Virus record (IMG/VR): IMGVR_UViG_3300046513_000221
Span: 62,001-126,000 of that record
Direction: 5' to 3' (one strand)
Length of the DNA stretch: 64,000 bases
Part shown: piece by piece, positions 9,260 through 40,443 of the stretch
Numbering within the stretch: position 1 is the stretch's first letter
How the letters are laid out: each line of letters opens with the position of its first letter
Program-made: the position numbers and the translations under genes
Notes under the pieces: model-generated
Seen by the model: only the letters and a program-made list of their open reading frames with translations
What the model was told of the DNA's origin: nothing
The model's database searches: none

Positions 9260-9607
9260 ATGAAGATCGTAGCTAAATTTTTCCACAAGGTCAGCGAGTC
9301 TCTGCTGGAGACTAATAGCACAAACTGGTCCATGACGAAGCTCGTCATGATGTTCCTGATGTACCCGACCGTCACCGGCATCTTCATCTACGATGCCATC
9401 ATCCACCAGCGCATGGACGTCATGAATTCGCTGGTATACATCACCGCAGTGGCGACTCCACGCGCCCTGAGCCAGATTCTGGCAGCGCGGTACGGTTTCA
9501 AGTCCAGTGACGGCAGCGCCATCACAGACGGCAACTTCGTCGATGCCTCCCCTGTGAAGAAGTCCAAACCTGCGGAGTGTCCTGATGACGACACTCCTAG
9601 ACAGTAA
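9260..9607 (+). CDS. Small membrane protein, possible holin
   Basis: Two hydrophobic segments (LVMMFLMYPTVTGIFIY; SLVYITAVATPRAL) and a charged C-tail; GAGG RBS. Confidence 0.5.
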   Translation: MKIVAKFFHKVSESLLETNSTNWSMTKLVMMFLMYPTVTGIFIYDAIIHQRMDVMNSLVYITAVATPRALSQILAARYGFKSSDGSAITDGNFVDASPVKKSKPAECPDDDTPRQ

Positions 9608-9623
9608 GGTCAGATAAAGAAGA

Positions 9624-9657
9624 TCCCCCATACACCCGTGAAGGTGTATGGGGGATT
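9624..9657. terminator. Bidirectional hairpin terminator
   Basis: ATCCCCCATACACC..GGTGTATGGGGGAT between convergent genes. Confidence 0.8.
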
Positions 9658-9696
9658 TTATCTAGCGGCTATGCGCCGCTGGCCGACGCCGGAGAA

Positions 9697-10140
9697 TTAC
9701 TTCTTGGCGACTGGCTTCTTCAGCGGAGCCTTGACCGGGGCTTTGGCTGCAGGAGCAGCTGCTTTCACCGGTGCCTTGACTGGTGCCTTAGCCGGAGCTT
9801 TAGCAGCCGGTTTGGCGGCAGCTTTAGCAGGGGCTTTCTTGGCGACCTTGTCCGCGTCGTTCACGCGCACCGACTTGCCGACCTTGAACTTCATGGTCGA
9901 GTAGGCCGGAACGTGAACGGTCTCGGTCGTGCGCGGATTGATGCGGTCGCGCGCTTCGACGTGCGCCCAGCGGAAGGTACCGATCGAGGTGCGGACCGAT
10001 TCCTTGGCCTGGATGGTGTCCTTCAGGCCGTCGAACACCGCAGCGATCATCACTTCGGTGTCTTTCTTGTTGGCGGTTACGCCGTTTGCGGCCAGTTGGG
10101 CTTGTACTGCAACTACCAGATCGTCTTTTACTGCGCTCAT
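9697..10140 (-). CDS. hup: HU-family DNA-binding protein with a PAKA/H1-like C-terminal tail
   Basis: IGTFRWAHVEARDRINPRTTETVHVPAYSTMKFKVGK is the HU arm, followed by KKAPAKAAAKPAAK repeats. Confidence 0.9.
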   Translation of the reverse strand: MSAVKDDLVVAVQAQLAANGVTANKKDTEVMIAAVFDGLKDTIQAKESVRTSIGTFRWAHVEARDRINPRTTETVHVPAYSTMKFKVGKSVRVNDADKVAKKAPAKAAAKPAAKAPAKAPVKAPVKAAAPAAKAPVKAPLKKPVAKK

Positions 10141-13166: not shown

Positions 13167-13178
13167 TATCTGGTTGTT
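13167..13178 (-). promoter_or_regulatory. Late-type promoter AACAACCAGATA
   Basis: AACA-N6-TA, 28 nt upstream of ATG 13139. Confidence 0.7.
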
Positions 13179-21878: not shown

Positions 21879-21890
21879 AACAGTAGAATA
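21879..21890 (+). promoter_or_regulatory. Late-type promoter AACAGTAGAATA
   Basis: AACA-N6-TA ~30 nt upstream of the beta gene. Confidence 0.75.
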
Positions 21891-35226: not shown

Positions 35227-35288
35227 AACGTCATGGGTATGAGCCGAAAGGTTCATACCCATCAAACGTTAACTAAACTCCTTGGCGA

Positions 35289-35305
35289 ATATATTATGTA
35301 AGTGA
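35289..35305 (+). promoter_or_regulatory. Early/middle-type promoter ATATATTAT-N5-TGA
   Basis: Motif copy. Confidence 0.7.
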
Positions 35306-35344
35306 TGACTTAGGGTTCATCTTCTAATATAGGGAGTTTTAGTA

Positions 35345-35848
35345 ATGCCTAAATACAACTGCACCGTAGTAAAGCGTCCATCTCAGTTCAACCTGCGTCA
35401 GTGGAAGACCAATCTGCCGAAAGCGAAGGGTCTCCAGTACCTGTACTGCTCCGAAGTGGCCGACAAGGGCAACGAGGACATCGGTGGTGATATGACGTCC
35501 TACCTGCTTCTCAACGGTAAGGTCATCTTCGCATCGCTACTGGCCGCTGGTCACGATCTGCCTGAAGGGGATGCTCGCGCACCGAACACCCGTTCCGTGT
35601 CGATCTTCCTGATGCCGGGTCAGGAGCCTGAGAAGGCATTCGCCCCGCTATTCAGTGTCCCGAGCATCGTTGACAGTTCGCTGGCCGATGGTCTGGTCGT
35701 GTACGACATGACATCCCCGACCTTCGACGGATTCATCGCCGGTTGCAAAGAGATCGAGAAGAAGAATAAGGATCTCGGCGACAGTGTGAGCTCTTTCTTC
35801 GCGAAGTACCGCGATCTGATCGAGGGTCATCTGCGTACGAAACACTGA
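35345..35848 (+). CDS. Hypothetical protein directly upstream of the structured RNA
   Basis: 167 aa, GGGAG RBS. Confidence 0.8.
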   Translation: MPKYNCTVVKRPSQFNLRQWKTNLPKAKGLQYLYCSEVADKGNEDIGGDMTSYLLLNGKVIFASLLAAGHDLPEGDARAPNTRSVSIFLMPGQEPEKAFAPLFSVPSIVDSSLADGLVVYDMTSPTFDGFIAGCKEIEKKNKDLGDSVSSFFAKYRDLIEGHLRTKH

Positions 35849-35851
35849 TGT

Positions 35852-36245
35852 GGTGCAATGCAGTCTGGTGAAAGGATGAAAGTCCTTGGGATTCTACGAA
35901 ATGGTATTTTTGCACACCTAACAAGGTAATGTACCAGTGAGTGGGCCTCTGCCTTCCGTGCGACATCGTCGCCTGTGCGTCCCGCGCCCACTCCGTAAAC
36001 GAATTCTTCTCTGGCTTGCACCCCGGAAGAATGGAGCGTCGGGAGACGTTCCACCTCACAGACCGCAAATCGGTCTGCTGGTCGTTGCCGCGAAGCGCCG
36101 GTCACGTTGGATAAACGTGCTGGATGCTAATGCGTGGCTACGGCTGATCAGGGAAGGCTTTGCCAACCCAACCCCGAGGCGGGATAGCGGCGTTCGGGCC
36201 GTTGCGGCGTCGAGAGACGCCACCCGCCTCACCTTTTTTTTTTTT
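35852..36245 (+). ncRNA. Candidate large structured non-coding RNA of unknown family
   Basis: About 10 nested or consecutive stems, GAAA/GGGA/GAGA/UUCG loops, G-U pairs favouring the + strand, ends in T12; no credible CDS. Confidence 0.6.
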
Positions 36246-36358
36246 GCACAATCTAGTTATGCGATAGCTGGAGCCTTCTACTTTTGCGTGTTATACCGCC
36301 AAAATCTACCACATGAGACCTCACGGTTTCATGTGGTATTTCAATCTAGCTATTAGGT

Positions 36359-36375
36359 ATATATAATAACGACGA
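36359..36375 (+). promoter_or_regulatory. Early/middle-type promoter ATATATAAT-N5-CGA
   Basis: Motif copy upstream of sbcD. Confidence 0.7.
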
Positions 36376-36419
36376 TACAGATTACAGGTTTGTACCTGCA
36401 CAGCATTTAAAGGACACGT

Positions 36420-37649
36420 ATGTCTAAAACAGTATTTGATTTCATTCCATCCTTCATCACCATCTCCGACGTACACCACGGCGCGAAGCCGGAAGAGCAG
36501 ATGCGTCACGAGTTCTACGGTGAAGGCGGTTTCTTCGATGTGCTCGATGCAGCACTGCCGGAACCGGAGTTTCTCGGCGTGGCGATCACCGGCGACTGGT
36601 GGGACTGCAAGCTCTCCATGAATGATCCGAAGGCCAAGCTCGGTACCTCGATCGTCGTGGATATCATGACCCGCTGCAAGAGTCACAACAAGTGGCTCAT
36701 CATCCTGCGCGGCACGTATTCGCACGATCTCCAGCAGCTGGACCACTTCAAGGAACTCGAAGTAACCTACGAAAAGTTCCGTCTATTCAACACCGTCGAG
36801 GAGTTCCAGTTCGGGCCGCTGAAGACTCTGATCGTCCCGGAGGAGTACCCGAAGGATCCGGACGAGTACTACGGCGAGTACTACGACCGCAAGTACGATC
36901 TGATCCTCGGTCATGGCTTCTTCGACTTCAACTGTTTCGACTCCAACGACGCCGAGAAATCGATGCCGTCGATGCCGGTCTTCGATGCAGAGAAGTTCTG
37001 CAAGATGGCACCGCTGACCATCTTCGGCCACGACCATACCCACAAAAACTTCATCGGCGCGATCCACAAGGGCATGAAGGGCAAGCCGGGTCGCATCTTC
37101 TACAACGGCTCCTTCTCCCGCCTCTGCCACGGCGAGGAACCGGCGAAGGGCTTCCTCTACGTCGTCTATGATCCTAGCGATATTCAGGTGAACTTCATCG
37201 AGAACGAGCTGGCTCCGAAGTACGTGACCGTCAACATCGAGTCTCTGATGCGGAAGGTCGCCACGATCAACTTCGAGTCCATCGTGAAGACGACGGAGGC
37301 TTACCGTAAGGCTCACGGTGTCTACGACCTGAAGGTCAAAGTACCGGCGAAGTTCTCCGAAGAGTACCGGAACGAGGTGGAGCTAGCTAAGAACTACTTC
37401 TCCAGCCGCGACGGCTTCCGGTTTGAGACTGGTCGCCTGAGCATCGCCCACAAGGACGAGAACGTCACCGACGTGCATGGTGAGACCGAGAACGGTAGCA
37501 GCATCGAGAACTCGCAGTATGCCTTCCTCTTCGGTAACGACGACATCGTGACGAAGATCGGCAAGTTCATCGACACCAAGCACAACGGCGAGATCACGCT
37601 GAGCCGGGAGGACATCGCGCAGTGTCTCGCTCCGGTCAACAACACCTAA
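36420..37649 (+). CDS. sbcD: SbcD/Mre11-like metallophosphoesterase nuclease
   Basis: ISDVHHG, ITGDWWD, LRGTYSHD, LGHG, FGHDH, YNGSFSR..GEEPAKGF. Confidence 0.88.
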   Translation: MSKTVFDFIPSFITISDVHHGAKPEEQMRHEFYGEGGFFDVLDAALPEPEFLGVAITGDWWDCKLSMNDPKAKLGTSIVVDIMTRCKSHNKWLIILRGTYSHDLQQLDHFKELEVTYEKFRLFNTVEEFQFGPLKTLIVPEEYPKDPDEYYGEYYDRKYDLILGHGFFDFNCFDSNDAEKSMPSMPVFDAEKFCKMAPLTIFGHDHTHKNFIGAIHKGMKGKPGRIFYNGSFSRLCHGEEPAKGFLYVVYDPSDIQVNFIENELAPKYVTVNIESLMRKVATINFESIVKTTEAYRKAHGVYDLKVKVPAKFSEEYRNEVELAKNYFSSRDGFRFETGRLSIAHKDENVTDVHGETENGSSIENSQYAFLFGNDDIVTKIGKFIDTKHNGEITLSREDIAQCLAPVNNT

Positions 37650-40431: not shown

Positions 40432-40443
40432 AACAGCTTCATA
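40432..40443 (+). promoter_or_regulatory. Late-type promoter AACAGCTTCATA
   Basis: AACA-N6-TA. Confidence 0.7.

What the first reader, a model, noticed from the sequence alone, without database searches (positions are those of the whole stretch)
35852..36245. ~390-nt densely structured orphan RNA downstream of an uncharacterised 167-aa gene
Seen: one of the longest gene-free stretches in the window, almost entirely base-paired. Stems: AAGGAT-GAAA-GTCCTT (35872-87); TGGTAT/GTACCA; GAGTGGGC/GCCCACTC (35939-93) enclosing GCGAC/GTCGC; ATTCTTC/GAAGAAT; TGGAGCGTC-GGGA-GACGTTCCA; CAGACCG/CGGTCTG; a multiloop closed by CTGGTC..GCCG/CGGC..GATCAG; GGG-aa-GGC-ttt-GCC-aa-CCC; and a terminal 3-way junction (GAGGCGGG/CCCGCCTC with UUCG- and GAGA-loop arms) followed by T12. 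GNRA loops and G-U pairs favour the + strand. The 5' GGTGCAA (35852-58) can pair with loop TTGCACC (36016-22), a possible pseudoknot. Two AACA-N6-TG promoter-like sites (35841, 35920) could give it its own start. I cannot match it to tmRNA, RNase P, SRP, 6S or intron motifs. Inference: a new large phage ncRNA, possibly forming an RNP with the upstream protein (35345-35848).
Basis: partly seen in the sequence, partly recalled or inferred. Interest (0 to 1): 0.85.

Follow-up and report, generated by a model that had tools for sequence, protein, structure and literature searches.

The report
New structured RNA family, jumbo phages
The last ~240 bases of this gene-free stretch encode a tightly folded RNA that matches no known RNA family and is kept, with compensating base changes, in three related giant phages, always downstream of the same small orphan gene; its function is unknown.

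Summary
The window is part of a 263-kb uncultured jumbo phage (IMG/VR UViG_3300046513_000221), distantly related to phiR1-37 and AR9. The finding is real but smaller than described. Only 36003-36233 plus the T-run is folded beyond chance (z -5.3 on the + strand). The first 154 nt (35849-36002) are not (z -1.0) and are not conserved.

No Rfam family, tRNA or tmRNA matches. Homologues of the core exist in two other metagenomic phages, L007 and L013 (SbcD 65% and 61% identical). They sit in the same variable slot upstream of sbcD-dnaB. Two modules are conserved:
- A bulged hairpin with an invariant GGAUA loop: 8 of 14 pairs changed on both sides, 0/500 shuffles as good.
- A three-way junction with a GAU junction and a GUUMGG loop.

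The window and L013 also share a hairpin with an invariant 11-nt loop and a long GNRA-capped hairpin.

In all three lineages a member of the orphan 167-aa protein family lies upstream on the same strand. That family also occurs without the RNA. The RNA is probably made as the tail of an early transcript. My best reading is a new trans-acting, protein-binding phage RNA. The mechanism is inferred, not shown.

The parts
35289..35304 (+). Early-promoter-like box ATATATTAT-N6-G. The predicted start is near G35304, 41 nt before the 167-aa gene.
   Evidence: It matches the AR9 early consensus AAATATATATTAT-(6N)-G (PMC5312081). The 9-mer class ATATAT[TA]AT occurs only 5 times in 64 kb, and two of those flank this cassette. 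The same box precedes sbcD in L004 and L013.
35345..35848 (+). 167-aa orphan gene (protein P0001), co-oriented with the RNA and upstream of it.
   Evidence: Only 4 clusters were found among 1.84 billion representatives. There are no Pfam, PHROG, NCBIfam or PADLOC hits. The AF2 model has pLDDT 80 and pTM 0.79. There is no PDB fold match. The one viral match is an AR9 166-aa uncharacterised protein, TM 0.60.
35849..36002 (+). Non-conserved 5' spacer. It holds GGUGCAA (35852-58) and the AACA-N6-TG sites at 35841-52 and 35920-31.
   Evidence: Fold z -1.04. No similarity to L013 or L007. All 3 strain SNPs of the RNA region fall here, at 35861, 35877 and 35913.
36003..36032 (+). Hairpin P-a: stem AUUCUUCU/GGAAGAAU with the loop CUUGCACCCCG (36015-36025).
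   Evidence: The stem and the 11-nt loop are conserved in L013 1048-1081, with one U-A to U-G change in the stem. It is absent from L007.
36033..36052 (+). Hairpin P-b: 8 bp capped by the GNRA loop GGGA.
   Evidence: L013 has, at the same position, an 11-bp hairpin of unrelated sequence capped by GAAA. The structure is kept although the sequence is not.
36059..36077 (+). Hairpin CAGACCG-CAAAU-CGGUCUG, specific to the window phage.
   Evidence: Present in the MFE. There is no counterpart in L013 or L007.
36080..36145 (+). Domain A: a rod of stacked helices. Its inner 35 nt (36094-36128) form the conserved bulged hairpin with the GGAUA loop.
   Evidence: The inner hairpin aligns without gaps to L013 1129-1163 and L007 1215-1249. 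Of 14 pairs, 8 changed on both sides, 95% of cells are paired, 0/500 shuffles match it and slid controls give at most 1. RNAalifold recovers it. The G-U pair at columns 4/32 is kept in all three.
36151..36169 (+). Small hairpin GGG-aa-GGC-uuu-GCC-aa-CCC, specific to the window phage.
   Evidence: Present in the MFE. Not found in L013 or L007.
36176..36230 (+). Three-way junction: an 8-bp closing helix, the junction GAU, hairpin 1 with loop GUUCGG, and hairpin 2 with the GAGA tetraloop.
   Evidence: The same architecture is present at L013 1196-1293 and L007 1272-1336. The closing helices pair in all three with different sequences. Hairpin 1 has 7 pairs, 3 changed on both sides, 95% paired. GGGAU and GGCGUUMGGGYC are invariant.
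36231..36245 (+). ACC followed by T12: the likely 3' end, where the closing helix and the U-run act as an intrinsic terminator.
   Evidence: Seen directly in the sequence. The run is 10-12 T in other assemblies. The simple terminator scan does not call it, because the 'loop' is a junction. L007 and L013 instead carry a separate canonical hairpin plus U-run downstream.
36308..36374 (+). Not part of the RNA: a gene-end hairpin (36308-36337) and an early-like box ATATATAAT-N6-G (36359-36374) that serves sbcD.
   Evidence: This separates the RNA from sbcD (36420-37649, PHROG SbcD-like).

Best explanation
Window 36003-36245 (+) is the conserved core of a previously undescribed structured RNA of a small clade of AR9/phiR1-37-like jumbo phages.

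Shown:
- It folds far better than shuffles, best as + strand RNA.
- Its modules recur in two other phages (SbcD 61-65% identical) at the same genomic slot. These modules are a hairpin with an invariant 11-nt loop, a GNRA-capped hairpin, a bulged hairpin with a GGAUA loop, and a three-way junction with a GAU junction and a GUUMGG loop. Stems change by compensatory substitutions while loops and bulges stay invariant.
- It matches no curated RNA family.

Inferred:
- It is transcribed early, as the 3' part of the mRNA of the 167-aa gene: an early-type box at 35289, with the end at the T-run. It may also be made later from an AACA-type site at 35920.
- It may be trimmed to a stable RNA of about 240-315 nt.
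- The invariant single-stranded loops then act as contact surfaces for a partner, so the RNA works in trans as a protein-bound RNA, either a scaffold or a decoy.
- The partner may be the co-inherited 167-aa protein.

My estimates: a real conserved RNA element, about 0.85. Trans-acting rather than cis-acting, about 0.55. The partner is the 167-aa protein, about 0.25.
For: Fold:
- z -5.33 for 36003-36233 as + strand RNA.
- z -3.73 as DNA and -2.95 on the - strand.

Homology:
- Three colinear blastn blocks with L013, best E 9e-6.
- A covariance model built from the window sequence alone finds L013 over its full length (27 bits, E 1e-5). It finds L007 in two pieces (21 bits at E 4e-4, and 8.5 bits).
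- The same model finds nothing in about 1.1 Mb of other loci.

Covariation:
- Inner hairpin: 8 of 14 pairs changed on both sides, 0/500 shuffles as good.
- Hairpin 1: 3 of 7 pairs changed on both sides.
- The junction's closing helix is kept with different sequences.
- RNAalifold recovers both hairpins independently.
- Conserved G-U pairs point to + strand RNA.

Not coding:
- Spacings between the conserved blocks differ by 10 and 11 nt.

Independent module:
- The upstream neighbour is the 167-aa gene in the window, an EAL gene in L013, and a tRNA/small-RNA cluster in L007.

Link to the protein:
- A 167-aa-family gene lies upstream on the same strand in all three lineages.

Transcription signals:
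-.
Against: - Only three lineages are available, so the covariation statistics rest on 3 sequences.
- There are no expression data, and the 5' end is unknown.
- L007 has only the 3' half (domain A and the junction).
- The protein family also occurs in a 259-kb phage with a convergent gene 54 nt downstream and no RNA within 5 kb. It also has a fold relative in AR9, which was not scanned for the RNA.
- The window's protein is neutral (pI 6.8) and has no recognisable RNA-binding domain.
- In the window the junction helix abuts the U-run. In L007 the element and its terminator lie 45 nt before a nuclease gene. Both fit a cis role.
Confidence: 0.55

Rival explanations
1. It is a cis-acting 3'/5' UTR element. 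The structure would be a compound terminator, an exonuclease block that stabilises the early mRNA, or a ligand- or protein-controlled attenuator for the downstream gene.
For: - In the window the closing helix of the junction is followed after 3 nt by T12.
- In L007 the element plus a canonical terminator ends about 45 nt before the Endonuclease_NS start, with no early box between them.
- The element lies inside a transcription unit in every case.
Against: - The flanking genes differ in each lineage.
- In the window and L013 a further hairpin and an early-type promoter box separate the element from sbcD.
- Invariant loops with covarying stems are more than a terminator or a stability hairpin needs.
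- No riboswitch model matches.
Confidence: 0.22
2. It is a DNA-level element of the replication module: a single-strand initiation or primosome-assembly site, or an origin, read as hairpins in single-stranded DNA.
For: - It sits just upstream of the sbcD and dnaB-like genes.
- The + strand also folds well with DNA parameters, z -3.7.
- The loop TGGATAA equals 7 of 9 bases of the complement of the DnaA box. This comparison is from memory and was not tested.
Against: - RNA parameters give the stronger signal.
- G-U pairs are conserved in the helices: 2 of 14 in the inner hairpin and 3 of 7 in hairpin 1 of the window. These would be G-T mismatches in DNA.
- The element is co-oriented with transcription and ends in a U-run.
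- There is no GC-skew switch here.
Confidence: 0.07
3. It is a very divergent member of a known RNA class that the Rfam models miss: a tRNA-like element, an intron fragment or an RNase P-like RNA.
For: - The closing helix of the junction is followed by ACC in the window, CCA in L007 and UAU-CCA in L013. This resembles an acceptor end.
- L007 carries a true tRNA-Asn about 600 nt upstream.
Against: - ARAGORN and RF00005 find nothing at the element, even at E<=10.
- A T-arm register for hairpin 1 works only in the window sequence, not in L013 or L007 (by inspection).
- The 167-aa ORF is complete, since its homologues end at the same place. So there is no split host gene for an intron.
Confidence: 0.06
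4. It is chance structure, or the remnant of a decayed gene.
For: - GC-rich DNA gives long spurious ORFs and hairpins.
- The 5' 154 nt are indeed no better than shuffles.
Against: - Conservation with compensatory changes across phages whose SbcD proteins are only 61-65% identical.
- Indels between the blocks are not multiples of three.
- The covariance-model E-values.
Confidence: 0.03

Closest known systems
GOLLD and ROOL large structured RNAs of phages and prophages (Rfam RF01998, RF03087; my description of them is from general knowledge)
   Same: Phage-borne and multi-domain. They are conserved by covariation, have no assigned function, and are often next to tRNA genes, as in L007.
   Different: Neither covariance model matches. 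This RNA is 2-3 times smaller, has a different architecture, and is known from only three lineages.
phi29 packaging RNA, pRNA (RF00044)
   Same: A phage-encoded RNA of about 170-240 nt built around a three-way junction. It is made early and acts in trans as part of a protein complex.
   Different: No model match. The genomic place and the phage group are unrelated. No link to packaging genes is seen here; the neighbours are replication and recombination genes.
3'-UTR-derived small RNAs that share the terminator of an mRNA
   Same: It lies directly after a stop codon, is co-transcribed from the gene's promoter, and ends at the unit's terminator.
   Different: It is much larger and more intricately folded than typical 3'-UTR sRNAs. 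It recurs behind unrelated genes in the other lineages.
T4 stable RNAs C and D in the tRNA cluster (from general knowledge, not tested)
   Same: Orphan stable RNAs of a large phage that are co-located with tRNA genes.
   Different: No sequence was available here for comparison. The window phage has no tRNA within 64 kb.

Membership tests
Any Rfam 15 family (tmRNA, RNase P, SRP, 6S, group I/II introns, GOLLD, ROOL, HEARO, pRNA, riboswitches) | Covariance-model score at or above the family's gathering score. | tested here: not met
   There are 0 hits in the whole window at gathering score. At E<=10 in 35300-36500 there are only two chance hits outside the element. Nothing at the homologous elements of L007 and L013.
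tRNA / tRNA-like element | A cloverleaf or armless variant detectable by ARAGORN or RF00005. | tested here: not met
   none at the element. The only tRNA is tRNA-Asn at L007 620-695.
tRNA / tRNA-like element | An acceptor-type helix followed by N-CCA. | tested here: inconclusive
   The tail after the closing helix is ACC-U12 in the window, CCA in L007 and UAU-CCA in L013. This is suggestive but post hoc and not uniform.
Group I intron | It interrupts a host gene whose exons join into one reading frame. | tested here: not met
   The 167-aa ORF ends where its homologues end. The sequence after the T-run has stops in all frames and is followed by a promoter box.
Riboswitch / cis-regulatory leader | It lies in the 5' UTR of the regulated gene, with an expression platform that overlaps the aptamer. 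| tested here: not met
   In the window and L013 a further hairpin and an early-type promoter box lie between the element and sbcD. Only L007 has the element directly before a gene.
Intrinsic terminator | A GC-rich stem directly followed by a U-run. | tested here: inconclusive
   An 8-bp GC-rich helix, then ACC, then T12. The scan tool does not call it because the helix closes a junction. Termination was not measured.
Retron msr/msd, OMEGA/reRNA, CRISPR-type guide RNAs | Adjacency to a reverse transcriptase, TnpB/IscB or Cas gene. | tested here: not met
   The neighbours are RusA, SbcD-like, DnaB-like and unknown proteins. No repeats or arrays were noted.
New family proposed here | Bulged hairpin with a GGAUA loop, plus a three-way junction with a GAU junction and a GUUMGG loop, on the + strand, upstream of sbcD. 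| tested here: met
   Present in the window, L013 and L007. Absent from six relatives with SbcD at or below 59% identity and from phiR1-37 at that locus.

The most novel reading that the evidence does not exclude
The RNA and the co-inherited 167-aa protein (a fold with no solved relative) form a new early-expressed jumbo-phage ribonucleoprotein. It would act in trans on a host or replication/recombination target, for example as a decoy against a host nuclease or defence sensor.
Probability: 0.25. Interest if true: 0.8.

Novelty: new member of a known kind. Interest (0 to 1): 0.62.

Why it matters
Very few structured non-coding RNAs of jumbo phages are known, and none has a function tied to their early, host-takeover gene sets. 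This one has a defined core and conserved contact loops. It also has a candidate protein partner and a fixed genomic address. That makes it a concrete target for expression, pull-down and structure work. It also shows that the slot upstream of sbcD in this clade collects RNA genes: this RNA, a tRNA and a second small hairpin motif. However, it is known from only three uncultured lineages and its function is open, so the present value is that of a well-supported new orphan RNA family.

Tried and rejected
1. Known RNA families: Rfam at gathering score and at E<=10, and ARAGORN, found nothing.

2. Nucleotide similarity to 50,697 phage records: none. The 167-aa protein and P0002 by tblastn against phages: none.

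3. Collection scans with motif patterns:
- GGGATNNNGGCGTTNGGGNC gave more than 119 loci in IMG/VR, and none scored with the covariance model.
- The two-motif pattern found only the window's own contig in IMG/VR. In the metagenome collection it gave 16 hits that were PolA coding sequence or other unrelated sequence.
- An alternative pattern gave 2 hits in GTDB genomes. Neither scored significantly with the covariance model (best 13.7 bits, E 0.05), so I treat them as chance.
- The P-a pattern and the inner-hairpin pattern in IMG/VR gave coding or chance hits only.
- The metagenome collection evidently lacks the samples that hold L007 and L013.

4. A paralogue in the window: none.

5. An antisense target of the invariant loop CUUGCACCCCG:
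- Its complement is not enriched in the window.
- A 10-nt complementarity to E. coli 16S rRNA 540-549 is real. But 6-25% of shuffled loops do as well, and the host is unknown. I rejected it as evidence.

6. A CsrA-type sponge: GGA motifs are not obviously enriched (counted by eye, not computed). Dropped.

7. A hammerhead or other small ribozyme core, and a group II domain-5 likeness of the bulged hairpin: the conserved positions do not fit across the three sequences (by inspection).

8. Coding potential: the 139-aa ORF looks spurious, and stop read-through adds 26 codons only.

9. Function of the 167-aa protein: Pfam, PHROGs, NCBIfam, PADLOC, ESM Atlas and PDB Foldseek were all uninformative. 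The proteins occupying this slot in other relatives are unrelated to it.

10. Strain SNPs: there are too few to test selection.

Full report
**Origin and setting.** The window is part of IMG/VR contig UViG_3300046513_000221, 263,413 bp. The SbcD-like protein encoded just downstream (36420-37649; PHROG SbcD-like) is most similar to that of Yersinia phage phiR1-37 (36%). The next best matches are the AR9/PBS1 group (about 29%). So this is an uncultured jumbo phage of that broad lineage.

Genes from about 29 kb to 42.7 kb all run on the + strand. They form a replication/recombination block: RusA, several unknown proteins, then a 212-aa gene, the 167-aa gene, the gene-free stretch, sbcD and a DnaB-like helicase.

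**Check of the observation.** The listed stems are present. The whole 397 nt folds to -165.7 kcal/mol, z -4.0 on the + strand and z -2.7 on the - strand. In a sliding scan it is the second most over-folded + strand stretch of the window. The top one lies in an HU-type gene with a repetitive tail and is a coding artefact.

The signal splits in two:
- 35849-36002 has z -1.04 and is no better than chance.
- 36003-36233 has z -5.33 as + strand RNA, -3.73 with DNA parameters and -2.95 on the - strand.

The 139-aa ORF across the region is Arg-rich and runs through the T-run. Reading through the TGA of the 167-aa gene adds 26 codons only.

**No known family.** Rfam 15 gives no hit at gathering score in the whole window. 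At E<=10 around the region it gives only two chance hits outside the element. ARAGORN finds no tRNA or tmRNA in the window. There is no nucleotide match in 50,697 phage records.

**Finding relatives.** The 167-aa protein is nearly an orphan, with 4 clusters among 1.84 billion representatives. I looked up the contigs of these proteins and of SbcD homologues. This showed that the gap between a conserved gene of about 205 aa and sbcD is a variable slot:
- It is empty in L014 and L151.
- It holds an unrelated 109-123-aa gene in L004, L150 and L153.
- In the two closest relatives it holds long gene-free DNA. L007 (SbcD 65% identical) has 927 nt and L013 (61%) has 816 nt.

**Homology of the RNA.** blastn gives three colinear blocks between the window RNA and L013, with similar spacing:
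- AATTCTTC..CTTGCACCCCG..GAAGA.
- AGCGCCGGTC-stem-GGATAA-stem-CTGGATGC.
- CGGGATAGCGGCGTTMGGGYCG.

L007 carries the last two blocks. I built a covariance model from the window sequence alone (36076-36236, 53 pairs). It finds L013 over its full length (27 bits, E 1e-5) and L007 in two pieces (21 bits at E 4e-4, and 8.5 bits). It finds nothing in the other relatives, elsewhere in the window, or in about 1.1 Mb of unrelated loci. L007 1195-1390 and window 36076-36245 fold with z -4.8 and -4.5.

**Conserved structure.**

1. *Inner hairpin of domain A* (window 36094-36128). It aligns without gaps in the three phages. It has 14 pairs, of which 8 changed on both sides, and 95% of cells are paired. 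No shuffle of 500 reaches this, and slid controls give at most 1. The GGAUA loop, the bulged A and a basal G-U pair are invariant.

2. *Three-way junction* (window 36176-36230; L013 1196-1293; L007 1272-1336).
   - The closing helix pairs in all three with different sequences.
   - The junction reads GAU.
   - Hairpin 1 has the loop GUUMGG and 3 of 7 pairs changed on both sides.
   - Hairpin 2 varies in length and sequence.
   - RNAalifold recovers both conserved hairpins on its own alignment.

3. *Modules shared by the window and L013 only.* Both have hairpin P-a with an identical 11-nt loop, CUUGCACCCCG. Directly after it both have a long hairpin of unrelated sequence capped by a GNRA loop (GGGA versus GAAA).

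The conserved G-U pairs and the strand asymmetry of the fold indicate + strand RNA. The spacings between blocks differ by 10 and 11 nt, so the region is not coding.

**Transcription.**
- *Early promoter boxes.* The box ATATATTAT-N6-G at 35289-35304 matches the experimentally defined AR9 early promoter (PMC5312081). This class of 9-mer occurs only five times in the window. Two of the five flank this cassette. The same box precedes sbcD in L004 and L013.
- *3' end.* The element ends in ACC-T12. The run is 10-12 T in other assemblies.
- *Inference.* The RNA is probably made early, as the tail of the 167-aa transcript.
- *Late promoter motif.* The AR9 late motif AACA-N6-TR is over-represented here, 64 sites against 39.5 +/- 6.9 expected. 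Its TA form is strongly intergenic (12 of 21 sites in 7.8% of the sequence). The phage therefore probably uses it. The two sites near the RNA (35841, 35920) are the TG form, for which enrichment is weak (6 of 43).

**Link to the 167-aa gene.**
- In the window the gene is directly upstream of the RNA.
- In L007 its homologue P0003 is about 700 nt upstream. A tRNA-Asn and two small hairpin units lie between them.
- In the L013 lineage, the 3.4-kb contig that carries homologue P0004 encodes a PAS-EAL protein. That protein is 100% identical to the truncated EAL gene at the start of L013. The two contigs therefore overlap, and the gene order is: 203 aa, P0004, EAL, RNA, sbcD.

So all three RNA-bearing lineages have the gene upstream on the same strand. 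The converse does not hold. Homologue P0002, in a 259-kb phage, is followed 54 nt later by a convergent gene, and no RNA is found within 5 kb.

The protein models well (pLDDT 80, pTM 0.79) and has no PDB fold relative. Its one viral match is an uncharacterised 166-aa protein of AR9 (TM 0.60, E 9e-5), which is not next to AR9's sbcD. Its pI is 6.8, and 8.6-9.3 in the homologues. Co-inheritance is shown. Physical association is not.

**Interpretation.** I consider the element a new family of structured phage RNA. Two features suit a trans-acting RNA whose loops contact a partner:
- It has invariant single-stranded loops on covarying stems.
- It occurs behind unrelated upstream genes.

The cis-acting reading keeps real weight. 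In the window the junction helix abuts the U-run, and in L007 the element sits just before a nuclease gene. A DNA-level role, a very divergent tRNA-like identity and chance are less likely, for the reasons given under the rival explanations.

**Limits.** Only three lineages are available. All further collection scans returned chance or coding hits. A published survey of IMG/VR structured RNAs required at least three distinct IMG/VR regions and reported motifs of at most 151 nt (PMC10690425). It would therefore probably not have reported this RNA. There are no expression data, and the host is unknown. The EAL gene's nearest relatives are from Oxalobacteraceae/Burkholderiaceae, which is only a hint.

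**Verdict.** This is a real and well-supported new orphan RNA family, smaller than first described. It has a plausible but untested protein partner. Interest is moderate to high, and the mechanism is open.

Noticed in passing
window 9400-10140 (- strand gene 9700-10140): An HU-type DNA-binding protein (PF00216, E 6.5e-14) whose 3' half is repetitive and GC-rich. This makes the region the most 'over-folded' in the sliding MFE scan. It is a coding artefact, not an RNA.
   Followed up: partly
L007 696-985 and L013 900-1000: A second conserved small RNA motif. It is a hairpin whose 13-15-nt loop holds the invariant sequence CCUUUAGCAAGA. There are two copies in L007 (757-768, 946-957) and one in L013 (937-948), with different stems. 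It is absent from the window. L007 also has tRNA-Asn(GTT) at 620-695.
   Followed up: partly
L013 2-835, and the contig of P0004/P0030: A phage-borne PAS-EAL (c-di-GMP phosphodiesterase) gene lies between the 167-aa-family gene and the RNA. Its nearest relatives (about 53% identical) are from Undibacterium and Burkholderiaceae, which may hint at the host.
   Followed up: partly
window 35227-36419 and the equivalent place in L004, L007, L013, L014, L150-L153: The gap between the conserved gene of about 205 aa and sbcD is a variable slot. It is empty, holds an unrelated 109-123-aa gene, or holds the 167-aa-family gene plus RNA genes, with a nuclease gene or an EAL gene in addition.
   Followed up: yes
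whole window, e.g. 21879-21890, 40432-40443, 13167-13178 (-): AACA-N6-TA is about 7-fold enriched in intergenic DNA and co-oriented with genes. The phage probably uses AR9-type late promoters. ATATAT[TA]AT-N6-G early-type boxes occur only 5 times, at 35289, 36359, 46238 (+) and 46149, 30876 (-).
   Followed up: partly
window 36234-36245: The T-run after the RNA is 10, 11 or 12 T in different assemblies of the same phage. All three substitutions in the RNA region (35861, 35877, 35913) lie in the non-conserved 5' part.
   Followed up: yes
window 35345-35848: The model of the 167-aa protein has no solved structural relative. It does match an uncharacterised 166-aa protein of Bacillus phage AR9 (A0A172JIF8, TM 0.60). 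I did not identify which AR9 gene this is.
   Followed up: partly
window 36014-36023 versus E. coli 16S rRNA 540-549 (L187): The loop GCUUGCACCC is perfectly complementary to 10 nt of 16S rRNA. However, 6-25% of shuffled loops match rRNA equally well, and the host is unknown.
   Followed up: yes
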